This document shows, piece after piece, positions 125 through 60,017 of a DNA stretch of 64,000 bases. The notes under the pieces were generated by a model that had not been told where the DNA came from, did not search any database, and saw nothing but the letters and a program-made list of their open reading frames with translations. Location of the stretch: IMG/VR virus record IMGVR_UViG_3300035070_002626, positions 62,001 to 126,000 of that record; one strand, 5' to 3'. Each line of letters begins with the position of its first letter. Position 1 is the stretch's first letter. The position numbers and the translations under genes were made by a program.

Positions 125-1159
125 TTATAATCCGGCAAACCATGTATCAGAAAAGTCTCTAACTTTAGCAAGTTCGATTTGTGCTGGTTCGTATTCAGGG
201 TGCACAGGACTAAACACATGATGGAAGTTGTATTCCTCAAGCGACCAAGAGCCCCACATTTGCAATTTAGAATATTCCACTATGTCTACATCAAATTCCT
301 TGCAAAAATAGTAAAATGGTTCTATTTCTTGATAATTTTGCTGTTGTAAAATCATCCTGGTATGTAATTTAAAACCTAATTCATGTTTCTTGTTTTGTAA
401 AAAATGCATTGCTTGTAGTAACTTTGGCCATTTCCCACCGCGGCGTATTTTTTCGTATGTGTCGGCTTGTGATGCATCAATACTTACAGTTATTTTGTTA
501 ATGTTATTAACTTTGTTTCCGAATCGATGCCAGTTTTGTTCGCACAGCAACCCATTTGTACCAAAGTCAAATTCTACATTGGGAAATTTATCAATATCAA
601 TTGAGTTTACAAAATCCATTAACATAGGACTAGCAAACACTTCACCTGCCCCGCCAAGTTCTATTTTTATTTTTTTATCTGTTGCGTCAGCAAACAAGTT
701 GTTAGAAAGAGTTTCGCCTAGCTTGCGCTGTTCTTCTTGTTTTGATAATGGAGTTTTTATAATATGACGTCGGCAGCTAGGACAACTTAGATTACAAGTT
801 TGGTCCCCATTGAAACTAATATGATGAGGCATTTCAAATTTTGATGGATCGTCGAATAGTTCTCTTATGTTCGGCGGCACTGACTTGATCTTGTTTAGCC
901 CGTTGTTAGCAATTACAGCACACCAATCTGCATCACAATAAACATAAGATCCATCAATGATACTTTGTCTAATTTTTTGTGCCAGTTCAGACGACAACAA
1001 TTCCTTTAGTGTGTTTTCTTTTAAATTTCCAATGGTAGTTGGCATCCATCGGTTACATCCACACATTCGAACATCGCCCTCTAGGGTAACCTCGATCATA
1101 ACAAATGGTGACAAACAGTACTTCCCTTGGTACTGTTTAGCCGGAAACATTTCAATCAT
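125..1159 (-). CDS. Radical SAM protein with N-terminal SPASM/twitch-like Cys cluster
   Basis: CNLSCPSC (CxxxCxxC) motif, GGAGE motif, N-terminal C...CGC...CDADWC; start at MIEMF overlaps the upstream stop. Confidence 0.85.
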   Translation of the reverse strand: MIEMFPAKQYQGKYCLSPFVMIEVTLEGDVRMCGCNRWMPTTIGNLKENTLKELLSSELAQKIRQSIIDGSYVYCDADWCAVIANNGLNKIKSVPPNIRELFDDPSKFEMPHHISFNGDQTCNLSCPSCRRHIIKTPLSKQEEQRKLGETLSNNLFADATDKKIKIELGGAGEVFASPMLMDFVNSIDIDKFPNVEFDFGTNGLLCEQNWHRFGNKVNNINKITVSIDASQADTYEKIRRGGKWPKLLQAMHFLQNKKHELGFKLHTRMILQQQNYQEIEPFYYFCKEFDVDIVEYSKLQMWGSWSLEEYNFHHVFSPVHPEYEPAQIELAKVRDFSDTWFAGL

Positions 1160-1319
1160 ACTTAACAGCCCGTACTGTGTTGGCATATTTTCGTTTAATC
1201 TTTTTCACAGTGGGCTTGCTGCGAGAAATAACTGAACCTAATGGTGCCGAAACTGTGGCAATACTACCACTTGCTGTTCCGCCTGTACTTACATCTTCTA
1301 GTAACTCTCGAATCTTCAT
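1152..1319 (-). CDS. Small putative virion/head protein (MKIRELLE...)
   Basis: Manual translation, 55 aa; ATGA-type overlaps with neighbours; shares the N-terminal motif of the cluster. Confidence 0.65.
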   Translation of the reverse strand: MKIRELLEDVSTGGTASGSIATVSAPLGSVISRSKPTVKKIKRKYANTVRAVKYD

Positions 1320-1603
1320 GATGCTAATATCTCAAATGTTTCATTATCTATTATAGATACCAGTCCTTCGGTGCACTTTAATCCACGTATTTTAAATTTG
1401 CCTTTGTCAAGTTTTTTTATGCGTATCTTGTAAATACCAGCAGGGGCATCAAGTTGCAACATCTCTGTTAAGTATTGCGGCCCACTCCATATATAATTGC
1501 GCTCGGTAAACATCTCGTCATTGACATATACTCTATATGCAGGCGGATTGGTTTGCCAATCACAATATAAATCAAATTCAATTTTAGTAAAATCTGTTGT
1601 CAT
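1316..1603 (-). CDS. Hypothetical protein (beta-rich, 95 aa)
   Basis: ORF track 1316..1756; start trimmed to MTTDF to remove overlap with the upstream gene. Confidence 0.65.
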   Translation of the reverse strand: MTTDFTKIEFDLYCDWQTNPPAYRVYVNDEMFTERNYIWSGPQYLTEMLQLDAPAGIYKIRIKKLDKGKFKIRGLKCTEGLVSIIDNETFEILAS

Positions 1604-1604
1604 A

Positions 1605-1952
1605 TTAGTAACGTGATTTTCTAGGGTATTTGTCTGCAAGTTTATCACGTTTGAGATTGGCAGAACTAAATGGATCATCCCAAGACGGAGGAAAAAAAGT
1701 ATCAACAAAATTATCAAATACATCTTGTGCACTTGCTGGTCTAGTCCGAGTATCAAATTGTTTGATAAGCAATCCAGCTGCTTTGCCTACACCTGCTTGT
1801 CCCTCACGAGACAGTTTTGCAGCTTGGGCAATAACTTCATCAGATACTTCGCCTTGTGGATCAATCTTTTTAAGATCTTTAATAGCTCTTGCAATAGCAG
1901 GCATTATATCTTCGGGGCCTCGATCTTCGTTGATTACTTCAAACATTTTCAT
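1605..1952 (-). CDS. Hypothetical protein (MKMFEVINE...)
   Basis: ORF track; start trimmed to the ATG after an AAGGAA RBS. Confidence 0.65.
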   Translation of the reverse strand: MKMFEVINEDRGPEDIMPAIARAIKDLKKIDPQGEVSDEVIAQAAKLSREGQAGVGKAAGLLIKQFDTRTRPASAQDVFDNFVDTFFPPSWDDPFSSANLKRDKLADKYPRKSRY

Positions 1953-1963
1953 ACTGTATTCCT

Positions 1964-2152
1964 TTATCTGCCTTGTGCGTAACTGTAACAGCCTTCGGTA
2001 AAACTGTTTGATGCACCAATTGGGCATTCTGATGTTGACTGTATGTTACGAGCTGCTGCCCATGCATATCCAGCTTTGTGGCCTGAACAATCTATTGTAC
2101 AACGATATCCTTTGTATGTCAAGTCTTCATTTACTATGTCATTTATTTTCAT
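1964..2152 (-). CDS. Small Cys-rich protein (CTIDCSGHKAGYAWA...C...SNSFTEGC)
   Basis: ORF track, start trimmed to MKINDIVNE; four spaced Cys. Confidence 0.7.
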   Translation of the reverse strand: MKINDIVNEDLTYKGYRCTIDCSGHKAGYAWAAARNIQSTSECPIGASNSFTEGCYSYAQGR

Positions 2153-2261
2153 ATTTTTTAGCCTCTTGGTATTCTTTCCAATATGTATTACGCTCGTTAG
2201 TCGTTGCTCTACGTACTTCGTGTTCAAGCAGTTTTTTTACATAATGTTGTATGTCTACCAT
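2139..2261 (-). CDS. 40-aa hypothetical protein (MVDIQHYVKKLLEHEVRR...)
   Basis: Manual translation; directly downstream of a TAAATA late promoter. Confidence 0.55.
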   Translation of the reverse strand: MVDIQHYVKKLLEHEVRRATTNERNTYWKEYQEAKKYENK

Positions 2262-2290
2262 TTTTATTCACTTTTCTTCTATGTACGTAT

Positions 2291-2896
2291 TTATTTAACC
2301 CAAGCACCTATACGTCCGTGAACATCTGGATAGTCACGATAAGTGTACCCTTCGGGCGGTGTTGTATCCTCGCCTTCCCAAACAGGGATAAAATGATTGA
2401 TATTACCGTCAAAGTCTTCGTTGCGTCTTAGGTGTACTTCAATTAGCTTGTTGCCTATAAACTCACAGTTCACCCATGGGTGATGTTCTACTAGTTCAGT
2501 TAGCAGTGTAGGAAATGCAAATGATTTGTCGTCTCTGCGCCAGTCGATCCACTTGGTAAATGTATCTTCAGGCTTGCGTCCTTGTACACACAACATTTGC
2601 TTGCTTTCAAAATAGTCTATACTATAATGATCGCCTTCGAAAAACTCACACCAAAAATGTCCCACTGGGAGATGCATTGTTTCTTGATCAAGCCAGATTT
2701 TTTGTGTACCTAGTCCAAGTCCTTGCATGTTAACACAAGGGCGCACAATATAAAAACCCGGATGCGGAACATCAAGTCCGACCGGGCCACAGTTATAATT
2801 TAGTTTACGTGCTAGTATAAGTTTATCCATTGCCCATATGTGATCTGGATTTATGTTTTGCCAAACAAAATCTTCTGCACTGTTTGGCGTGTACAT
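2291..2896 (-). CDS. Putative ATP-grasp-like protein
   Basis: YIVRPCVNMQGLGLG loop and WCEFFEGDHYSID strand resemble ATP-grasp signatures; family call tentative. Confidence 0.5.
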   Translation of the reverse strand: MYTPNSAEDFVWQNINPDHIWAMDKLILARKLNYNCGPVGLDVPHPGFYIVRPCVNMQGLGLGTQKIWLDQETMHLPVGHFWCEFFEGDHYSIDYFESKQMLCVQGRKPEDTFTKWIDWRRDDKSFAFPTLLTELVEHHPWVNCEFIGNKLIEVHLRRNEDFDGNINHFIPVWEGEDTTPPEGYTYRDYPDVHGRIGAWVK

Positions 2897-2898
2897 TA

Positions 2899-3297
2899 TT
2901 ATTTTCCTTTGGTATTGCTTACATTCTTTGCTTTGCCTTTACGGTCTTTGTCAGGATCTTGCCTACGTTTTTTATTAACCGCGGTAGCTATAGCTTTCTT
3001 GCCGCCTTTAGCTCTTAGGCTTGCAGCTTTACTTTTACTGAGACACTTAGGCTTGCCCTCGCCTTCGCTGCTATCACCACATTTGCCAATACGTTCGCCT
3101 TTAGTATTGTAACGATCCCATCCGCCGCCTCCGGCTCCGCCTTTTTTACCTTTGCCAAACCACGCTTTGAGATCTTCTTCTACTTCTACTTCTTCGTTCT
3201 TAACACAGTTGGGCACACGTTTTCCAAACATGGTTTTCATACCATCTTTTTTGTAGCCTTTCCAACACTTCTCTGTGACAATTTCTTCTATAAGCAT
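2899..3297 (-). CDS. Basic mosaic protein with KCWKGY...KRVPNCV and KPKC motifs (T4-like cyanophage-type modules)
   Basis: ORF track; start trimmed to MLIEEIVTE. Confidence 0.7.
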   Translation of the reverse strand: MLIEEIVTEKCWKGYKKDGMKTMFGKRVPNCVKNEEVEVEEDLKAWFGKGKKGGAGGGGWDRYNTKGERIGKCGDSSEGEGKPKCLSKSKAASLRAKGGKKAIATAVNKKRRQDPDKDRKGKAKNVSNTKGK

Positions 3298-3298
3298 G

Positions 3299-3499
3299 TT
3301 ACTTCTTCTTACTATTACCCCAATTAGCGGCACCCTTTTTGCGGCACTGTACTAACGCACCCGATGCATATGCACTTGGCCATACTTTATAACGTGATTT
3401 TACTTTGTGATAGCAAGCATCTTTCTCGCCAGCGGCTTCATCAAACTGTGCTTCTGTCATCATTTCTGTTGATTCATTTAAAACGTCATTGATTTTCAT
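3299..3499 (-). CDS. Small basic protein with KVWPSAYASG motif (DUF5872-like)
   Basis: Motif CYHKVKSRYKVWPSAYASGALVQCRKKG recognised from memory; start MKINDVLNE. Confidence 0.65.
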   Translation of the reverse strand: MKINDVLNESTEMMTEAQFDEAAGEKDACYHKVKSRYKVWPSAYASGALVQCRKKGAANWGNSKKK

Positions 3500-3680
3500 T
3501 TAGTATATCCTTCATTACGCTGGTTGCTGTATCAGTAAAGAGGCGGGGCGCAACTGCATGTATAACAAGAGCGGGTACTAACAACTGTAGTCTTACAGCA
3601 ATTTTGAGTGCATGGCCCATATGTTCTAAGCCAGTTTTGCCTGTTTCTTCTAAATGTAGTTTGCATTGTTTACTAAACAT
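3486..3680 (-). CDS. Small membrane-associated hypothetical protein (DUF6356-like)
   Basis: HL...EH...A pattern plus hydrophobic helix; TAATG overlap with upstream gene. Confidence 0.55.
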   Translation of the reverse strand: MFSKQCKLHLEETGKTGLEHMGHALKIAVRLQLLVPALVIHAVAPRLFTDTATSVMKDILNENQ

Positions 3681-5830
3681 TATTTCTTTTTTCCACTCTT
3701 CATATTGGCACACCAGTGATACATCTTAGCTCGCTCGCCTGAATATTTCTTTGCACGAGCACGTAAATCAGTTACACTACCGTTGCAACTTGCACCTGCT
3801 GCTTTTACACGACCCGGTTTGCTTTTGCCTTTTACTTTACCGTCTGCAAAGTTTTCATCCATTTTGGCTAATTTTGCAGCAATAGCCATTTGTCTACGCT
3901 TTGCTTTACTTTTACCTTTGAATTGCGGAGCATCACTTTGGTAGAAATCATCAATAACATCACCCATTGGGGTACGCTTTGTAATCTTCTCATTAATGCT
4001 TTCTGTGAAAAATGGGCCACTAAGTTCTTGGTCATCCTGGCTTAACATTGCTTTGTTAATATCAGCAATAATGTCTGGAGTTAAATGTCTTGCACGGTTA
4101 ACAGTGTTACTGTTAAAAAATAAATGTACTTCAACAGGAATGTCGCCAAATACTTGTTGTATGGCAATCATTCTGCTGCGACCTTCATGCCCAATGATTT
4201 CTGCTGTACTGCCTTCTGTGTAACTAATAATAAGAAAAGGTGCTCCAATTGCACCACCATTTTTGATATGATCAACTACTTTATCAACTGCCGGAACACC
4301 ACGTCTGCTTTCTGCTAATTTCAAAAACACACTTGGTTTCATCTTAACACGCATGCCAAAATAGTCAACTTCTTGGTTGTTAGGAACAGCACCCCAACCT
4401 TCTTTGTTGTCTATATTTACATCTTCGTTAAATGCTGTATCTGTTGCAGTCTTTGCACTCTTACCGTCAGGATGCTTAGGATTGATACCTACAACTTCGC
4501 CATTGATTAAGTCTGAGATGTTTGATGCTTTGCCAATTCTATCTAATAGCTGATGTAGTTTGTCATTCGCATCGTAGTTACCACTTTCATAGCCACTCTT
4601 ACCACGAACTTCTGTACGCTTGCCAGTTGCGGTATCAGTAATGTTTAACACCATCATATCAGCATCACGTTCTAGTTGTAGCTTGTAACCTTCGTTAACA
4701 CTTTCATTAAGTTTGTATTCGTATGTATCAGTGCCTGTTTTTTCTAACCATTCAAACTTGTCGAAAAACTTCCGGTTAGTTACTTTATATACTGTCAACG
4801 GTAATTTGTTTTGATCTGCATATGATTTTATTGCATTCATAACTTTACCGCCTATGCCCGCACCTCGTTCTGACGTTGAGATTTGTGACATTAAGATTTT
4901 TTCTGGGCGATAACTCTTTGCTGCATCTAATAGTATATGTCCAAAGTCCCCTTTAAGCATATACGTGCCACCACCACCGATCATTTCTGTTGTTGACCAT
5001 GGGACCCCAACTTTACCCCAACTAGTCCAACTAGTTGCACCAATAGCTTTACCGATATGTTTGATTAATGGGTAATCATTATTTAATGGCCACCATTTCT
5101 TATCAAATTCGATATCTACGTATCCATTTCGGATAGCGTCAAATTCTTCTTTAGATACTTCGTTGACACTTTCATTAATGCTTTCTTCGTTTACGTTGCT
5201 AGATCTAATTGCATCATACTTTGCTTGTAAACTTTCTACTAACCCTAGATTATACGCCTTGTTAGCACTGGTGTTTTTAGCTGCTGTTGCATGCAGTAGT
5301 GGAGGACTGCCCTTTTTGTCAATCTTCATACCTAGTTTAGCAGCCTGGCGCTGTGTTTCACCTGGCTTAACGTCAACAGTGAGTGCACTACTAAATCGAG
5401 GATCTTTTGCTTGTGCTTTAGTTGGAATGTAGCCACTTGCTTCTTCAACTTTAGCTTTGGGAATATCGTTGCGATGTTCAAGTTCGCTAGCATCTACTAC
5501 AATTGCTGGCAAACTTTCAAGCCCAGCTTTTTTTGCAGCGGCAAATCTGTGGTGACCGTCAAGAATCATATAACCATCAGTGGTACGGGTTACAACAATA
5601 GGATCACCGTTCCACATGTTTGCTTTCATTTTAACAGCAATGCTTAAAACTTGATCTCCATGCTCTTTGGCATTCAACTTGTCTGTGGATTCAAATCCGT
5701 ATAACTGAGACAATGGTATATCTTTGTCAGCAGAACGCTTCATAAATTCATCAGGTATGTCGGCACCCCTGTAACCAGGGTTGTGCCATAATGTTATTTT
5801 TTCTTTAGATTCAAACCATGATGCTCGCAT
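3680..5830 (-). CDS. 716-aa mosaic protein: ParB/Srx-like domain, GNAT-like domain, second ParB-like domain, basic modules
   Basis: DPIVV...ILDGHHRFAAA (ParB/Srx); ERGAGIGGKVM (GNAT motif A); IIGHEGRSRM; late promoter just upstream. Confidence 0.75.
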   Translation of the reverse strand: MRASWFESKEKITLWHNPGYRGADIPDEFMKRSADKDIPLSQLYGFESTDKLNAKEHGDQVLSIAVKMKANMWNGDPIVVTRTTDGYMILDGHHRFAAAKKAGLESLPAIVVDASELEHRNDIPKAKVEEASGYIPTKAQAKDPRFSSALTVDVKPGETQRQAAKLGMKIDKKGSPPLLHATAAKNTSANKAYNLGLVESLQAKYDAIRSSNVNEESINESVNEVSKEEFDAIRNGYVDIEFDKKWWPLNNDYPLIKHIGKAIGATSWTSWGKVGVPWSTTEMIGGGGTYMLKGDFGHILLDAAKSYRPEKILMSQISTSERGAGIGGKVMNAIKSYADQNKLPLTVYKVTNRKFFDKFEWLEKTGTDTYEYKLNESVNEGYKLQLERDADMMVLNITDTATGKRTEVRGKSGYESGNYDANDKLHQLLDRIGKASNISDLINGEVVGINPKHPDGKSAKTATDTAFNEDVNIDNKEGWGAVPNNQEVDYFGMRVKMKPSVFLKLAESRRGVPAVDKVVDHIKNGGAIGAPFLIISYTEGSTAEIIGHEGRSRMIAIQQVFGDIPVEVHLFFNSNTVNRARHLTPDIIADINKAMLSQDDQELSGPFFTESINEKITKRTPMGDVIDDFYQSDAPQFKGKSKAKRRQMAIAAKLAKMDENFADGKVKGKSKPGRVKAAGASCNGSVTDLRARAKKYSGERAKMYHWCANMKSGKKK

Positions 5831-6816: not shown

Positions 6817-8244
6817 TTAATCTTTGACAACAAGAGTAGTCTTAGGTCCATCTTTCATCAACATGTTAAACGTTTTAAGAAAGTGACGCTTTTGAGTAAT
6901 TCTTTTGTCAATGTCTTGTTGCACCTCTGGGCTTTGTCTAAGGAACAATGACATAAATTTTTCAGCGACTTTTGGAGTTACTTCAACTGTAGTACCATCA
7001 TCAAATTTAATTGGAAACGCTTGTTTGTCTTTTCTACTCGAAATGTTGTCTAGTACACGCAGCGGTTTGCTTTGATATACGTACTCTACGAGTTCTTCTT
7101 CTGGTAGATAATCTTCTACTGCCATTGCATCTAGTGCGTTTTTCTCATCGCCGGGAGAAACATATCCACTACCTGTTCTTGCAGATCCCACAGTGTGGCT
7201 TGATGATGGTGACTTGTCTGCTCCTGCGGCTTTCGCTATACCAGCTGCTACACCACTTAGTGCTGATCCAACCATGCCCGTGTTAGCAGGATTCATCTTA
7301 GATGCTATATGACCTGCGCCACGCAGAGCTGCATATGCAAGTGGATTTTCATCAACCTGCTGTTCTTCGTTTGAAATATCAATTTCAACATCTTGCTTAA
7401 CAGGGCGATTGCCTCTTTTGTCTTTAAAACGCTTGTACTGAGCAAGTGCTTCAATCATTGATTGCATTACACCACTTTGATAAATGTGATATTCAAGTTC
7501 TTCGTACTTGCCTGAATCCAACATGTCAGCTAGACTGCGTAGCTTGTTACCGAGATTATTTTGTAAACTAGTTTCACTGTGTGTACCCATCCCGCCTTTT
7601 GGCAAGATATCAACAGTGTCGCCTTTGTTAACAATAATTGTCTCGTCGACTGTTGCCAGCGTTTTATCGCCGAGTACTGTTGAAAAAATTTCTTTGGCTT
7701 TATTAACAATTGCTGGGCTTGAATCTCCATACAAGCTTTTAACAAGATTGGTTCTCTCACCGTCGCTCATAGTTGGCCATTTAGCACGTATCTCAGTAGC
7801 ACTACTCATGCCTGGGCCAAAGCTTACAGTTGGCAAGTAAGTCATAAACCCGTGTTGTGTCATTGGTTCTGGATTGCGTCTATTAAGTGGTTGCAAATAA
7901 GATCTGCTACCATCTTTCTTTACACCACCCGGGAGAGGTGTTACGCCGCTGTCTTTATCAGATCTAACAAAAATAAGTTGTGTATCTGCTGGATCATAAT
8001 GTTGTGTAATTTCTTGAGGACGAAAGGGCGATTTAACTTGAATAAATCTATGCTTTGGTATTCCAGCAATTTGCGCTAGCTGCTGTTTTAGCCTAAACGG
8101 AAAAGGTCTTGCAGCTTGATCATCAGTTGCAGCAATATACACATCAGCACGGGGAAACGCTTCAACGGCTGCATCGTACAGTGCTTTGTGCCCTGCGTGG
8201 AACGGATGAAACCCTCCTGGAATGACGACTAATTTTTTTAACAT
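6817..8244 (-). CDS. Cytidylyltransferase-like (HIGH motif) nucleotidyltransferase with C-terminal extension
   Basis: N-terminal VVIPGGFHPFHAGH and MSSATEIR motifs. Confidence 0.75.
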   Translation of the reverse strand: MLKKLVVIPGGFHPFHAGHKALYDAAVEAFPRADVYIAATDDQAARPFPFRLKQQLAQIAGIPKHRFIQVKSPFRPQEITQHYDPADTQLIFVRSDKDSGVTPLPGGVKKDGSRSYLQPLNRRNPEPMTQHGFMTYLPTVSFGPGMSSATEIRAKWPTMSDGERTNLVKSLYGDSSPAIVNKAKEIFSTVLGDKTLATVDETIIVNKGDTVDILPKGGMGTHSETSLQNNLGNKLRSLADMLDSGKYEELEYHIYQSGVMQSMIEALAQYKRFKDKRGNRPVKQDVEIDISNEEQQVDENPLAYAALRGAGHIASKMNPANTGMVGSALSGVAAGIAKAAGADKSPSSSHTVGSARTGSGYVSPGDEKNALDAMAVEDYLPEEELVEYVYQSKPLRVLDNISSRKDKQAFPIKFDDGTTVEVTPKVAEKFMSLFLRQSPEVQQDIDKRITQKRHFLKTFNMLMKDGPKTTLVVKD

Positions 8245-8260
8245 AGTATTCTTATTCTTC

Positions 8261-8620
8261 CTAATAACTTAGCGTGATAGGCCCAATTTCGCCATCAGTA
8301 AACTGACTAACAATTGCACGTAACCAAGTAAACTTCCCGTAAATTGTAATACTGTAATCTGTAGTAATCGCAGTTGATCCGTCAACAGCACTATCGCCGG
8401 GAAAGGTATACACATTAAACCATTCACTGTCCACCGTTGGGTCTGTGTCTAAACTTGCTTGTATAGTCACCAACCCAGGAAAATCGTCAGCAATAAATCT
8501 TACACTCTGACTGTTACCTTGTCCTTGATAATAGCCCACTGCTTTTTGTCGCTCTCCAGTTATAACTGAAGTGCCACTGTGGACTGTTTCTGGAATTAGT
8601 ACAAGGTTACTGGATTTCAT
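8261..8620 (-). CDS. Hypothetical (putative structural) protein
   Basis: ORF track; beta-rich, 119 aa. Confidence 0.65.
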   Translation of the reverse strand: MKSSNLVLIPETVHSGTSVITGERQKAVGYYQGQGNSQSVRFIADDFPGLVTIQASLDTDPTVDSEWFNVYTFPGDSAVDGSTAITTDYSITIYGKFTWLRAIVSQFTDGEIGPITLSY

Positions 8621-8621
8621 T

Positions 8622-8801
8622 TTATTCTGCTTTGATTACTTCTACTAGCACACCACTCTGCGAGTTTTCGTTTGCTAGTTGCGAAATTACTGCCTCGAGT
8701 TGTGCAATAATTTCATCATTGAGAAGTTCCGTAGCAGGTGAATCATCCTTGACTAGTTCGCTTACTGTGATTGCTATAGATGTTGAGTTTATCTTTGCCA
8801 T
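8622..8801 (-). CDS. 59-aa hypothetical protein (MAKINSTSIAITVSELVKD...)
   Basis: Manual translation; TAAATA late promoter 6 nt upstream; fills the gap exactly. Confidence 0.7.
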   Translation of the reverse strand: MAKINSTSIAITVSELVKDDSPATELLNDEIIAQLEAVISQLANENSQSGVLVEVIKAE

Positions 8802-8809
8802 AATGTTAT

Positions 8810-37070: not shown

Positions 37071-37238
37071 TTAGTCTTCTTTCTGCCAAATAGCCCAAGC
37101 ACCGTATGCAATAGCAGCATATGCAGCTAATTTAGCAAATGGCCCTGCAATCAAAATGACCAAGCCGACTCCGATTAGTACAGCACCATCCCAAGAAGTA
37201 CGCTCATCTACTCTACTTTTAATCCATCGTCTAATCAT
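37071..37238 (-). CDS. Small two-TM protein
   Basis: ERTSWDGAVLIG...; start trimmed to MIRRW. Confidence 0.65.
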   Translation of the reverse strand: MIRRWIKSRVDERTSWDGAVLIGVGLVILIAGPFAKLAAYAAIAYGAWAIWQKED

Positions 37239-37801
37239 TATAATCTCCCGTTGATTGCATTCCAATTGATGATCTTCATCATATTGTTTATATACTTTTT
37301 CTTAGCGTCTTTGGCAGGCACATAATCCATAAACGAATGCTCCCACATGTCGATTGGTAATAGTATATCTGTTTTGTATGATTGGTTAGGCGTAGTTTTA
37401 ATCTTGCCATTCTTAGCAAGGTACACCCAGCCGCTGCCTTGAAGTGTCATTGCAACACGCAACATTTCTTTTTTAAAATTGTCGTAGTCTTCGTGGTGTG
37501 CGTCGATAAATTCTTTAATTGTCCCGGTAGGTCTGTTTGCGCCTTTGGGTGCTTGTAACTGTTGCCAAAATAAGTTGTGAAGTTTTGCTCCACCGTAATT
37601 AAATTTAGGATCGCCTTCGTTGTTGTTGTAACGATTTACATATCCTTTGGTCAACACATTGTAATGGTAGTCAACATTTTCTTTAGAAAGCACAGGAGCT
37701 AATGCACCACTGTCGTACGGCAGTGCATCGGCTGCTAATTTCTCTTCTTGTTTGTCTTCGGTTAGTTGAATGTATTTTCTAATTTCTTGTTGCATGTACA
37801 T
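37238..37801 (-). CDS. Fe/Mn superoxide dismutase
   Basis: DYHY, LHNLFW, GSGWVYL, DMWEH motifs (all four metal ligands present). Confidence 0.88.
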   Translation of the reverse strand: MYMQQEIRKYIQLTEDKQEEKLAADALPYDSGALAPVLSKENVDYHYNVLTKGYVNRYNNNEGDPKFNYGGAKLHNLFWQQLQAPKGANRPTGTIKEFIDAHHEDYDNFKKEMLRVAMTLQGSGWVYLAKNGKIKTTPNQSYKTDILLPIDMWEHSFMDYVPAKDAKKKYINNMMKIINWNAINGRL

Positions 37802-58478: not shown

Positions 58479-60017
58479 ATGCGAGAATATTTAGATATTA
58501 TCACCGAAGGGGTGGGCCTAGCGAACCGTAAACCGGGAGAAAAATTTGCAAATCCTCAGGGAGATATATTAACGTTCCAAAGTTTAGACTTTTTTCCTGG
58601 AAAAGACTCATATGAGGATGAAGAAACAACCAACACTGCACTACTAGATTTGGGCGCACAGTTGGGAATTGACCCTCAAGAAATACAATGGGCAAATGCA
58701 CAAGGATCAAACAAAGCGTTTGGTATAGCAAGGTTTGTAGACGGTGCAGGCAAGGACTACTTAGTAGGTAGATGGTTTCAAAAAATTAATGCTAACAAAA
58801 CATTAAACAGATTTCCAAATGATTTGCCAGGCGGTTTTAAATATCAAAGTAAAGCGGCTGTTAAAGAAAATTCTGGATACAAACCTACCGAAATTCTTAC
58901 ACAATTACAGAATCAGACACCTGCTAGCATCGTAAAACAAATTGTTGCAAAATTTGGCGCAGACTCAGACGAAGTACGTGCTACTAATGCATTCATGGAA
59001 CAAGATTTTCCAATGAACATTCCACGTGGCGAAATGAATGCCGAAGCATTTACAAATTACTTTTGTGAAATACTACAGCCAATGGCACTTATTATGGGCA
59101 AAAATGTAGGCGGAAATGCAGACGAAGCAGAACAGATTTTCTTTGGTGGATCTGGATACAGTGATTGCACAATTAGTTTTAATGCAGGAACCACAGATGG
59201 ATTATTTGATAGCTTGTTAGTCAACCCTCAAGGCAAACAAATTAAGATATCAAGTAAAGCCGCTGCCGGGGCAAATGCTAGTATTGTTAACTTGCTGAAA
59301 AGTGTACAAGACATGCGCACTGCACCTGCTGGACAGAAATTGTTAAAACAATATGCTGAAGCAGTTAGTATTATGGAAATTATCAAGAACGGCGGACACA
59401 CAGATGGATGCCTAAATCTTGCCATTGCACTAGACTTTATCTCGCCAGAAGAAAAGCAACAAGTAAAATCATTAGCCGGTATGGGACCAGATGACGATGT
59501 AATGAGTGTGATTACCAGCGATAAACTACAAGGTCTATACAATGGTCGTAATGCTCGCGACATGAGCCGCATTATTCCAATCGAACACATGTTGGCTTCT
59601 ATTGCATACCCAATTGCTGAAATTGTAAACACCGAAACAGACTTTGGCGAAGCAGCAAGTGCAATATTAAATCATAGTGCATTGGTACAGATGTACACAC
59701 TGAGTAGTAATAGCGACGACACTATTAACGTCAATGATTTCCAATGTGTGTATCCAAGTAACACAGTTACTGGTGTGCTTATGAGAGCTGATAAAACATA
59801 TATGAGTACACAAGGCAAGGGAAACTTTGTGTTTAAAATTCTCAAAAATGGTGCCAGTGATGCTGAAACAGAAATTGCTGATGTTAGCACAGATATTCCA
59901 AATACACAGCCAGTAAAGAAAAAGGCTGCGCCTGGACAAACTACTAGTAATGTCAAAGCACAGCCTCGGGGAGGGGACCTGGATAACAAGTCCCTAGGGC
60001 GTGAACGTAGAACTTAG
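58479..60017 (+). CDS. 512-aa hypothetical (putative virion) protein
   Basis: Long ORF; MREYLDIITE N-terminus resembles the shared head-protein motif. Confidence 0.75.
   Translation: MREYLDIITEGVGLANRKPGEKFANPQGDILTFQSLDFFPGKDSYEDEETTNTALLDLGAQLGIDPQEIQWANAQGSNKAFGIARFVDGAGKDYLVGRWFQKINANKTLNRFPNDLPGGFKYQSKAAVKENSGYKPTEILTQLQNQTPASIVKQIVAKFGADSDEVRATNAFMEQDFPMNIPRGEMNAEAFTNYFCEILQPMALIMGKNVGGNADEAEQIFFGGSGYSDCTISFNAGTTDGLFDSLLVNPQGKQIKISSKAAAGANASIVNLLKSVQDMRTAPAGQKLLKQYAEAVSIMEIIKNGGHTDGCLNLAIALDFISPEEKQQVKSLAGMGPDDDVMSVITSDKLQGLYNGRNARDMSRIIPIEHMLASIAYPIAEIVNTETDFGEAASAILNHSALVQMYTLSSNSDDTINVNDFQCVYPSNTVTGVLMRADKTYMSTQGKGNFVFKILKNGASDAETEIADVSTDIPNTQPVKKKAAPGQTTSNVKAQPRGGDLDNKSLGRERRT

What the first reader, a model, noticed from the sequence alone, without database searches (positions are those of the whole stretch)
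1152..3499. Family of late small proteins sharing an N-terminal MK(I/M)xE/D(I/L/V)xxE tag: candidate capsid-targeting sequence
Seen: otherwise unrelated proteins start MKIRELLE (1319), MKMFEVINE (1952), MKINDIVNE (2152), MLIEEIVTE (3297) and MKINDVLNE (3499). Distant genes start similarly: SOD (MQQEIRKYIQLTE) and 58479 (MREYLDIITE). Known: T4 internal proteins carry a ~10-aa capsid-targeting sequence ending in E, removed by the prohead protease at (I/L)-x-E. Inference: these are a large cargo of internal head proteins injected with the DNA.
Basis: partly seen in the sequence, partly recalled or inferred. Interest (0 to 1): 0.68.

Follow-up and report, generated by a model that had tools for sequence, protein, structure and literature searches.

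The report
Capsid-targeting leader on phage cargo proteins
A marine jumbo T4-like phage puts the same 9-residue N-terminal tag (close to phage T4's capsid-targeting sequence) on many unrelated small proteins, so these are most likely proteins loaded into the phage head and trimmed by its head protease: a known trick, seen here in a new phage group.

Summary
Five minus-strand genes at 1152-3499 begin MKIRELLE, MKMFEVINE, MKINDIVNE, MLIEEIVTE and MKINDVLNE, and are otherwise unrelated.

- **Not chance.** A scoring matrix built only from leaders in other contigs puts these genes, plus MRAEEFITE and MRAIEFLQE elsewhere in the genome, at the top of 373 N-termini (7 observed, 0.18 expected).
- **The phage.** It is a 300-kb marine T4-like jumbo phage (Rak2/PA5oct group). 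It has a gp21-type (S77) prohead protease and a gp23-type capsid protein.
- **Match to T4.** The consensus M-[KR]-[IA]-N-[ED]-[IF]-[IL]-x-E matches T4's MKTYQEFIAE (IPII/IPIII) and MAKINELLRE (gp24).
- **Same motif as linker.** It recurs at module borders in the adjacent 716-aa ParB protein (INESVNE, LNESVNE, TESINE) and in the scaffold protein.
- **Separate from the cargo fold.** Homologues of one cargo domain carry a Sec signal peptide in place of the leader in phages where no S77 protease was found. AlphaFold leaves the leader unfolded.
- **Virion links.** Two cargo modules are fused in a cyanophage protein found in virions by mass spectrometry. PA5oct virion protein gp150 starts MKINDIITE.

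Best reading (about 0.7): a T4-type capsid-targeting, protease-cleaved propeptide. Packaging, cleavage and late expression are not shown. This is a new member of a known kind.

The parts
1152..1319 (-). Gene A, 55 aa. Leader MKIRELLE(D); the mature part is basic (pI 10.5).
   Evidence: Weak match to phrog_17311. In the relative L008 the ortholog keeps the leader (MKIKELLED) while the next ~30 aa are only about half identical.
1605..1952 (-). Gene B, 115 aa. Leader MKMFEVINE. No known family.
   Evidence: Relatives were found only in two near-identical contigs.
1964..2152 (-). Gene C, 62 aa. Leader MKINDIVNE, followed by a small Cys-containing domain (CT.DCSGHKAGY.W).
   Evidence: 44 related IMG/VR loci. 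Stand-alone copies carry the leader, internal copies follow ..E|LSF junctions, and three non-T4-like records carry a signal peptide instead. AF2 gives pLDDT 49 for the leader and 78-92 for the domain. No PDB fold match.
2899..3297 (-). Gene D, 132 aa. Leader MLIEEIVTE, then two basic modules: a CW.GY module and a WFGKGKKGG module, joined by ..EVEVEE|D.
   Evidence: Both modules match parts of phrog_727, phrog_9737 and others, and cyanophage polyproteins. In relative L008 the first module is replaced by a different one behind the leader MRIRDIISE, and joined to the second by EDFLNE|D.
3299..3499 (-). Gene E, 66 aa. Leader MKINDVLNE, then a DUF5872-like basic module.
   Evidence: Weak Pfam DUF5872 match; phrog_727 at 5e-25. 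366 cyanophage records hold the module inside a large protein.
3680..5830 (-). 716-aa multi-module protein with a ParB_N domain at aa 76-118. Leader-like doubled junctions lie at its module borders.
   Evidence: It has 7 [ILVMF]NE against 0.7 expected, the highest in the genome. ParB_N from Pfam. Pieces of it are separate leader-bearing genes in other phages.
5159..5194 (-). Junction 1 of the 716-aa protein: VNE-ESINE-SVNE (aa 213-224).
4691..4711 (-). Junction 2: LNE-SVNE (aa 374-380).
   Evidence: In relative L008 the same border reads SIDE-ALNE.
4424..4432 (-). Junction 3: FNE (aa 467-469).
3989..4009 (-). Junction 4: FTE-SINE (aa 608-614).
58479..60017 (+). 512-aa protein with the 10-residue leader variant MREYLDIITE. 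This has the same spacing as T4's MKTYQEFIAE (Y4, hydrophobic 7 and 8, E10).
   Evidence: No Pfam or PHROG family.
3486..3515 (-). The 3' end of the DUF6356 gene reads ..MKDILNENQ*. This is a leader-like remnant, out of frame with E's start and overlapping it.
   Evidence: The whole DUF6356 gene is absent in relatives.
2291..2896 (-). 201-aa gene without a leader (phrog_3577; weak ATP-grasp lead). It is a variable insert in the cluster, not part of the leader family.
   Evidence: It is absent from relatives' contigs, which join 2165 to 2910.
125..1186 (-). Radical-SAM/SPASM-like gene next to the cluster. It was considered as a possible RiPP maturase and rejected.
   Evidence: Pfam. A homologue lies next to leader genes only in near-identical relatives, and in none of about 40 other leader loci.

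Best explanation
The shared N-terminus is a T4-type capsid-targeting propeptide.

**The motif.** It is a 9-residue (sometimes 10-residue) amphipathic leader, M-[KR]-[IA]-N-[ED]-[IF]-[IL]-x-E.

**Proposed mechanism (inferred).**
1. The hydrophobic positions 3, 6 and 7 dock the protein onto the scaffold core of the prohead.
2. The aliphatic-x-Glu end is cut by the phage's gp21-type serine protease during head maturation.
3. This frees small, mostly basic proteins inside the head, to leave with the DNA at infection.

**Second use of the motif.** The same motif, often doubled (INESVNE), serves as the linker and cut site between modules of the adjacent 716-aa ParB-containing protein.

**How the family evolves.** The cargo modules form a shuffled pool. 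They are separate leader-bearing genes here, and are fused into polyproteins in related jumbo phages and in T4-like cyanophages.

**Shown:** the motif, its N-terminal specificity, its match to T4, the protease gene, and the modular exchange.
**Inferred:** docking, cleavage, packaging and ejection.
For: 1. **The machinery is present.** There is a Peptidase_S77 hit at 8e-27 that aligns to T4 gp21 (5JBL) with His (GEVDHP) and Ser (GVSSRG) in place. There is a Gp23 capsid hit at 3e-100. The head module has the T4 gene order: portal, small core proteins, protease, scaffold, capsid.

2. **The motif matches experimentally defined T4 signals.** These were read from the T4 record: IPII/IPIII MKTYQEFIAE|A, gp24 MAKINELLRE|S, gp22 MLKEQLIAE|A. 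According to PMC9026906, T4 residues 4 and 7 target and residues 8 and 10 direct processing. The 40 distinct leaders here are invariant or hydrophobic at the equivalent positions 3, 6, 7 and 9, and MREYLDIITE matches with no shift.

3. **N-terminal specificity.**
   - 7 of 373 N-termini score as leaders against 0.18 expected.
   - In the earlier test with the protein-C-homologue matrix, 0 of 1846 internal Met positions do.
   - The result is replicated in a 518-kb relative, with 11 against 0.43 expected.

4. **Known protease substrates carry the motif.** The scaffold starts ..DSDLVNE|D and ranks second in the genome for [ILVMF]NE. The capsid protein has HLAE|NATAG at the column equivalent to T4's LTE|AEIGG, conserved as FLVE|NASAG and QLME|SATNG in PA5oct and a Vibrio phage.

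5. **The leader is not part of the cargo fold.**
   - AF2 pLDDT is 49 for residues 1-10 and 78-92 for the domain.
   - In L011 and L017 a 15-25-aa basic spacer separates leader and domain.
   - Homologues in a 63-kb phage and two proviruses in which no S77 gene was found carry a Sec signal peptide at the same place.
   - All three large leader-bearing records in which the search could find it encode S77.

6. **Unrelated proteins of 51-388 aa in about 12 other contigs carry the leader**.

7. **Virion links.**
   - Modules of D and E are fused in S-SCSM1_29, found in CsCl-purified virions by mass spectrometry (PMC9602691).
   - In 120 cyanophage homologues every module is preceded by ..x-x-E.
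   - PA5oct gp150, which sits next to the portal gene and is annotated as an MS-detected structural protein, starts MKINDIITE.

8. **Cargo is basic, like T4 internal proteins.** pI is 9.4-11.4 for 4 of 7 small cargo proteins, against a genome median of 5.3.

9. **Cassette behaviour.** The relative L008 swaps a module behind a retained leader. Insertions and deletions fall exactly at gene borders.
Against: - There is no direct evidence of packaging, cleavage or ejection for any protein of this uncultivated phage.
- No canonical TATAAATA late promoter lies in or just upstream of the cluster. The neighbours are metabolic genes, not structural ones.
- The 716-aa protein and the cyanophage polyproteins lack a clear N-terminal leader, so targeting of those must work some other way, or through internal motifs.
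- Cultured relatives use the leader sparingly. PA5oct has two clear cases, and one of them (EST35_0271) was not detected in virions. Vibrio phage 2.275.O has none by the strict pattern.
- Many cyanophage junctions (V-T-N-E) have the hydrophobic residue at P4 rather than P3.
- The protease-substrate fold test gave no verdict.
Confidence: 0.7

Rival explanations
1. The motif is only a protease recognition or linker sequence, a processing signal inherited from polyprotein ancestors. It does not itself direct proteins into the capsid. Packaging, if any, would depend on the basic modules binding DNA or the core.
For: - The same motif is internal in the 716-aa protein and in polyproteins of relatives.
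- Cyanophage polyproteins are virion proteins yet have no N-terminal leader.
- The cargo is basic.
Against: - The full 9-residue pattern, including Met-Lys/Arg and hydrophobic position 3, is strongly N-terminal-specific.
- It matches the T4 positions shown by mutagenesis to target rather than to process (PMC9026906).
- A bare cut site would need only the last three residues.
Confidence: 0.13
2. The small genes are precursors of ribosomally made, post-translationally modified peptides (RiPPs). On this reading the shared N-terminus is a leader recognised by the neighbouring radical-SAM/SPASM enzyme or by the ATP-grasp-like 201-aa protein.
For: - A radical-SAM/SPASM-like gene abuts the cluster.
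- The 201-aa gene has a weak ATP-grasp lead.
- Several cargo proteins are small and contain Cys.
Against: - The radical-SAM gene is next to leader genes only in near-identical relatives, and in none of about 40 other leader loci.
- The 201-aa gene is absent from close relatives that keep the leader genes.
- The leader also sits on proteins of 250-512 aa, and at the prohead-core protein of PA5oct.
- Nine residues is short for a RiPP leader.
- The cargo domains are folded and conserved.
Confidence: 0.03
3. The likeness has no protein function. It would be either a translation-start bias (A/U-rich early codons) or a DNA cassette border retained because recombination between leader-coding stretches shuffles genes.
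For: - Lys, Ile and Asn codons are A/U-rich.
- Module swaps and insertions/deletions end at leader borders, and a leader-like remnant overlaps E's start.
Against: - Only about 2% of genes have the motif, so it is not a general start bias.
- Conserved residues use different codons.
- The invariant Glu9 and hydrophobic positions 6 and 7 are kept across contigs that differ throughout at the DNA level.
- A recombination role is compatible with the CTS function, and has been proposed alongside it in T-even phages.
Confidence: 0.05

Closest known systems
Phage T4 capsid-targeting sequence (CTS) of internal proteins IPI/IPII/IPIII, and the gp21-cleaved N-terminal propeptides of gp24, gp22, gp67, gp68 and Alt
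   Same: - A short N-terminal leader on otherwise unrelated, mostly basic small proteins.
- The pattern Met-Lys..acidic-hydrophobic-hydrophobic-x-Glu.
- A gp21/S77 protease is encoded in a T4-order head module.
- The genes sit in a variable, cassette-like locus.
   Different: - The leader is one residue shorter (9 aa) in most cases, with Asn often at P2.
- The cargo families are unrelated to T4 internal proteins.
- The same motif is doubled as an inter-module linker in large multi-domain proteins.
- The host phage belongs to the distant Rak2/PA5oct-like jumbo group and is uncultivated.
- There is no experimental proof here.
Proteolytically processed ejection proteins of giant phages phiKZ, 201phi2-1 and SPN3US
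   Same: Many head-internal proteins are cut after Glu by a gp21-related prohead protease, including multi-site processing of large proteins (PMC5694885, PMC7411985, PMC10052503, PMC9026906).
   Different: In those phages the published motif has a small residue at P3, according to my recollection of those papers (not re-read here). Their propeptides are long and not a shared 9-mer. They belong to a different phage lineage.
Polyvalent proteins of phages and conjugative elements (Iyer et al. 2017, PMC5512222)
   Same: - Large proteins that string together unrelated modules (ParB here; ligase-like and NMNAT-like modules in L043).
- They are predicted to be packaged and injected.
- Processing into pieces is predicted.
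   Different: That work proposes mainly zincin-like metallopeptidase or assemblin-like domains carried in the protein itself. Here the cutter would be the separate prohead protease, and the linker motif doubles as the leader of stand-alone genes. The text terms I searched found no cyanophage or T4-like examples there.
Cyanophage DUF6321 'gp114' virion proteins (S-CAM22, S-RIM8, S-SCSM1_29)
   Same: They contain the D and E modules at up to 80-90% identity. Each module is preceded by ..x-x-Glu. One member was detected in virions by mass spectrometry.
   Different: The modules are fused in one 450-720-aa protein that has no N-terminal leader. Here they are split into single genes, each with its own leader.

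Membership tests
T4-type capsid-targeting propeptide (CTS) | The phage encodes a gp21-type (Peptidase_S77) prohead protease with catalytic His and Ser. | tested here: met
   PF03420 hit at 8.4e-27. Alignment to T4 gp21 5JBL at 3e-14, with GEVDHP and GVSSRG conserved.
T4-type capsid-targeting propeptide (CTS) | An N-terminal leader of about 10 residues that ends aliphatic-x-Glu. | tested here: met
   The five window genes plus at least three more in the genome. 36 of 40 distinct leaders end in Glu, with I/L/F/V at positions 6 and 7.
T4-type capsid-targeting propeptide (CTS) | Hydrophobic or aromatic residues at the targeting positions (T4 IPIII residues 4 and 7). | tested here: met
   Positions 3 and 6 are I/A/L and I/F/L. 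The 10-residue variant MREYLDIITE has Y4 and I7. The T4 positions are taken from PMC9026906. The equivalence is by alignment only.
T4-type capsid-targeting propeptide (CTS) | The leader is shared by proteins that are otherwise unrelated. | tested here: met
   No common family among A-E. Twelve further unrelated proteins in other contigs carry it.
T4-type capsid-targeting propeptide (CTS) | The proteins are present in virions with the leader removed. | not testable with these tools
   Indirect evidence only: S-SCSM1_29 (D and E modules) and PA5oct gp150 (MKINDIITE) are MS-detected virion proteins. No cleavage data.
T4-type capsid-targeting propeptide (CTS) | The leader alone is enough to package a foreign protein. 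| not testable with these tools
   This needs a cultured phage or a prohead assembly system.
T4-type capsid-targeting propeptide (CTS) | Expression together with head genes (late). | tested here: inconclusive
   TATAAATA marks structural genes in this genome but is absent from the cluster. The nearest one upstream on the same strand is at 14244. Contigs from RNA libraries cover the genes but cannot show timing.
T4 internal proteins IPI/IPII/IPIII (sequence families) | Sequence homology of the mature protein to T4 internal proteins. | tested here: not met
   Pfam and PHROG scans give no internal-protein family. The cargo is of different families.
Polyvalent proteins (Iyer et al. 2017) | Several domains of disparate activity in one polypeptide of a phage, predicted to be packaged. 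| tested here: inconclusive
   Only ParB_N is recognised by Pfam in the 716-aa protein. A GNAT-like motif and a second ParB-like stretch are seen by eye only. L043 has ligase-like and NMNAT-like motifs by eye.
RiPP precursor peptides | Conserved genomic linkage of leader-bearing precursors with the modifying enzyme. | tested here: not met
   A radical-SAM homologue is found only in near-identical relatives, and in none of about 40 other loci. The 201-aa gene is dispensable in relatives.

The most novel reading that the evidence does not exclude
Leader and linker may be one and the same signal in a modular 'injectome' system shared by marine T4-like phages.

- Small basic modules would move freely between stand-alone leader-tagged genes and protease-processed polyproteins.
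- The abundant cyanophage DUF6321 virion proteins (more than 7,900 relatives) would then be precursors cut by the prohead protease into internal-protein-like peptides.
- If so, the packaged and injected protein set of thousands of uncultivated marine phages could be read from sequence by scanning for this motif.
Probability: 0.4. Interest if true: 0.65.

Novelty: new member of a known kind. Interest (0 to 1): 0.5.

Why it matters
**A sequence-only handle on packaged proteins.** Proteins that a phage packs into its head and injects are its first weapons against host defences, but they are hard to predict from sequence. A recognisable leader gives a cheap way to list candidates in uncultivated marine jumbo phages.

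**An uncharacterised family gets a hypothesis.** The result suggests that a very abundant cyanophage virion protein family (DUF6321) is a protease-processed polyprotein.

**A possible tool.** It offers a natural 9-residue tag that might be used to load foreign proteins into capsids of this phage group, as the T4 CTS is used.

**Reach of the T4 principle.** The principle itself has been known from T4 for about 30 years. The gain is its reach, to the Rak2/PA5oct-like group and marine metagenomes, and the leader-equals-linker observation. It is not a new mechanism.

Tried and rejected
- **Protease-substrate fold test.** Complex prediction with the protease and protein E returned 'no answer' (score 0.00, controls not run). 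It counts neither for nor against.
- **Fold of the C domain.** Foldseek against the PDB found no match with E of 0.001 or better, so the cargo's function stays unknown.
- **Near-identity DNA search.** A megablast of the region against 50,697 phage records found nothing.
- **Late-promoter check.** There is no TATAAATA in the cluster. Sigma-70-like and terminator-like sites occur at chance level.
- **RiPP idea.** Rejected on lack of conserved linkage.
- **General [ILVMF]-x-E near N-termini.** Too common to be informative: 79 ATG sites match a loose regex.
- **SOD as a leader protein.** It has an N-terminal extension ending LTE but does not score with the leader matrix. Left open.
- **Internal high-scoring matrix hits.** They are scattered over ordinary proteins with no pattern.
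- **PA5oct paper.** No cleavage or N-terminal data for gp150.
- **Polyvalent-protein paper.** The terms I searched there found no cyanophage or T4-like cases.
- **Vibrio phage 2.275.O.** No strict-pattern leader anywhere in the record.
- **Limits of my gene calls.** They are a crude home-made codon-usage caller and some starts are wrong (D, for example).
- **Operator rules.** No other genetic code was used. Read laying was given 4,801 letters.

Full report
**What is there.**
- The window lies at 62,001-126,000 of a 299,910-bp linear IMG/VR virus record, estimated 86% complete.

| Gene | Coordinates | Length | N-terminus |
|---|---|---|---|
| A | 1152-1319 | 55 aa | MKIRELLED |
| B | 1605-1952 | 115 aa | MKMFEVINE |
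| C | 1964-2152 | 62 aa | MKINDIVNE |
| D | 2899-3297 | 132 aa | MLIEEIVTE |
| E | 3299-3499 | 66 aa | MKINDVLNE |

- Past residue 9 they share no family.
- Conserved residues are written with different codons, so this is protein-level conservation and not a DNA repeat.
- Interleaved with them are genes without the motif:
  - a 106-aa ORF;
  - a 201-aa phrog_3577 protein;
  - a DUF6356 protein;
  - upstream, a 716-aa protein with a ParB_N domain;
  - downstream, a radical-SAM/SPASM-like gene.

**Is it more than chance?**
- A regex fitted to the five finds only these five among all ATGs of the genome, but that is circular.
- I therefore built a position matrix only from leaders seen in other contigs and scored the N-termini of 373 crudely called genes.
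- Seven score 8 or more, against 0.18 expected from internal 8-mers.
- In the earlier test, whose matrix came only from leaders of protein-C homologues, no internal Met among 1846 scores 6 or more.
- The list contains A, B, C and E (D was mis-started by my caller). It also contains two basic 125-aa proteins elsewhere in the genome (MRAEEFITE at G000 219505-219882, MRAIEFLQE at 207145-207522) and a 71-aa protein of the head module (MKLFEFFEA).
- A 10-residue variant, MREYLDIITE, heads the 512-aa protein at 58479-60017.
- In an independent complete 518,643-bp relative the same matrix finds 11 N-termini against 0.43 expected.

**What phage is this?**
- It has a Peptidase_S77 (T4 gp21) gene and a Gp23-type capsid gene.
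- These sit in a T4-order head module: portal, small core proteins, protease, scaffold, capsid.
- The protease aligns to the T4 gp21 structure 5JBL with His and Ser conserved.
- By capsid protein, the nearest cultured phages (64-66% identity) are PA5oct, Vibrio phage 2.275.O and Sinorhizobium phage Phosso, that is, the Rak2-like jumbo group.
- The DNA occurs in marine, seawater and estuary metagenomes of at least ten studies.

**Comparison with T4.**
- Read from the T4 record, IPII and IPIII start MKTYQEFIAE|A, gp24 MAKINELLRE|S, gp22 MLKEQLIAE|A, and gp23 is cut at ..LTE|AEIGG.
- The review PMC9026906 states three relevant points:
  - the first 10 residues of IPIII are sufficient for head incorporation;
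  - residues 4 and 7 carry targeting, while residues 8 and 10 carry processing;
  - CTS-like leaders sit on diverse basic proteins of T-even phages.
- PMC3012670 says the same of the T-even internal proteins.
- Forty distinct leaders collected here give M-[RK]-[IA]-N-[ED]-[IF]-[IL]-[TNS]-E. This is the T4 pattern shortened by one residue.
- MREYLDIITE matches T4 with no shift.

**The motif on known protease substrates.**
- The phage's own scaffold protein starts ..DSDLVNE|D. It is second in the genome for [ILVMF]NE density (4 against 0.36 expected).
- First in the genome is the 716-aa protein next to the cluster (7 against 0.7 expected).
- The capsid protein has HLAE|NATAG at the position that aligns with the T4 cut. 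This is conserved as FLVE|NASAG in PA5oct and QLME|SATNG in the Vibrio phage.

**Leader equals linker.**
- In the 716-aa protein the motif marks module borders and is doubled: VNE-ESINE-SVNE, LNE-SVNE, FTE-SINE. Compare INDIVNE in the leaders.
- Related contigs hold polyproteins in which the C domain follows ..EIIAE|LSF..PLDE|LTF or ..SIEE|LSF. One is a 933-aa protein that also carries ligase-like and NMNAT-like stretches and the D-type CW module.
- Modules of D and E are fused in the cyanophage DUF6321 proteins (S-CAM22 gp114; S-SCSM1_29).
- S-SCSM1_29 was found in CsCl-purified virions by mass spectrometry.
- In 120 homologues, out of more than 7,900, each module is preceded by ..LTE..FQE..FGE or ..TNE.

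**The leader is a separable unit.**
- Protein C has 44 related loci.
- Stand-alone copies begin with the leader.
- In L011 and L017 a 15-25-residue basic spacer lies between leader and domain.
- In a complete 63-kb phage and two proviruses a Sec-type signal peptide occupies the leader's place, ending just before the same TF.G..CT start.
- In those three records the search found no S77 protease gene. The three largest leader-bearing records with a hit (518, 162 and 157 kb) have one. A fourth record of 158 kb, 30% complete, showed none.
- AlphaFold2 on the family alignment folds residues 11-62 confidently (pLDDT 78-92) and leaves residues 1-10 at 49.

**Cassette behaviour.**
- In an 85-97% identical relative (L008), D's first module is replaced by a different one behind the leader MRIRDIISE. 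It is joined to the same second module through EDFLNE|D, where the window has EVEVEE|D.
- A's leader is kept while the next ~30 residues are only about half identical.
- The DUF6356 gene is missing there.
- Contigs from four metatranscriptome libraries (relatives at 90-97% identity) join 2165 to 2910, which removes the 201-aa gene, and 3497 to 3682, which removes DUF6356. These are contigs and may include DNA, so they prove neither transcription nor timing.
- The DUF6356 ORF ends ..MKDILNENQ*, a leader-like remnant overlapping E's start.

**Cultured-relative test.**
- In PA5oct the best matrix hit in the whole genome is gp150: MKINDIITE, 73 aa, next to the portal gene, annotated as a structural protein by ESI-MS/MS.
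- Its homologues in G000 and in the Vibrio phage start MKLFEFFEA and MKLVELFEA.
- The second PA5oct hit (EST35_0271, MKIKEIILE) was not detected in virions.
- The Vibrio phage has no strict-pattern leader.
- So the leader is tied to the prohead core in this group, but the expansion onto many cargo proteins is a feature of the marine clade.

**Rivals.**
- *RiPP leader.* Rejected because the radical-SAM gene is linked only in near-identical relatives, the 201-aa gene is dispensable, and the leader sits on proteins up to 512 aa.
- *Start-codon bias or a pure recombination signal.* This does not explain an invariant Glu9 and hydrophobic positions 6 and 7 written with varied codons on about 2% of genes.
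- *A processing signal without targeting.* This remains possible (about 0.13), because the polyproteins lack an N-terminal leader.

**What is not shown.**
- Packaging, cleavage, ejection and late timing are not shown.
- TATAAATA is under-represented in the genome (16 against 39 expected) and marks structural genes (9 of 16 lie within 60 nt of a start). None is in the cluster.
- The protease-substrate fold test gave no verdict.
- The C domain has no PDB fold match.

**Verdict.**
- It is a new member of a known kind: a T4-type capsid-targeting, protease-cleaved propeptide.
- The added point is that the leader is the same signal as the inter-module linker of polyproteins in marine T4-like phages.

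Noticed in passing
window 125-1186 (-) and G000 246949-247971 (-): There are two radical-SAM genes. The second (340 aa, CNLHCPQC) sits inside the head module, between the portal gene and the small core proteins, which is an odd place for such an enzyme. The first has its SPASM-like Cys box N-terminal to the radical-SAM core.
   Followed up: partly
window 3486-3515 (-): The DUF6356 gene ends ..SVMKDILNENQ*. This is a leader-like remnant in another frame, overlapping the start of gene E. The whole gene is absent in relatives, which suggests insertion by recombination at leader-coding DNA.
   Followed up: partly
window 2166-2909 and 3498-3681: Presence/absence polymorphisms fall exactly at gene borders in relatives. 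The 201-aa phrog_3577 gene plus a 40-aa ORF are missing in contigs of runs X18 and X19. DUF6356 is missing in L008 and X20.
   Followed up: yes
window 37238-37801 (-): The Fe/Mn-SOD-like protein has an N-terminal extension of about 25 residues (MYMQQEIRKYIQLTE|D..) ahead of the usual SOD start. It ends in an L-T-E site like T4 gp23's, but does not score as a leader.
   Followed up: partly
window 6817-8244, 9480-11765, 11789-12604 (-): The phage encodes an NMNAT-like protein (475 aa), a ClpA/B-like protein (761 aa) and a DnaJ-like protein (271 aa), judged by eye from N-terminal motifs. NMNAT was reported in S-SCSM1 virions, and an NMNAT-like stretch is part of the 933-aa polyprotein in L043.
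   Followed up: no
whole genome G000; e.g. window 14244 (-): TATAAATA is under-represented (16 against 39 expected). Nine of the 16 lie within 60 nt upstream of gene starts, including a tail-sheath-like gene, which suggests T4-type late promoters.
   Followed up: partly
L013-L016, L020, L021 (IMG/VR loci): The CT.DCSGHKAGY.W domain of protein C also occurs with Sec signal peptides in a 63-kb phage and two proviruses, so it is a secreted protein there. Its fold has no PDB match.
   Followed up: partly
L079 (PA5oct) 7230-7862 and 7875-8981: In the PA5oct record the S77 protease homologue is annotated as 'prohead assembly (scaffolding) protein'. The true scaffold homologue (EST35_0153) is 'hypothetical' and was not detected by mass spectrometry, as expected if it is degraded.
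   Followed up: no
window 3680-5830 (-), N-terminus: The 716-aa protein starts MRASWFESKE, which ranks 9th of 373 with the leader matrix. It resembles MRASEFIVE of a 276-aa protein in the 518-kb relative, and may be a degenerate leader.
   Followed up: no
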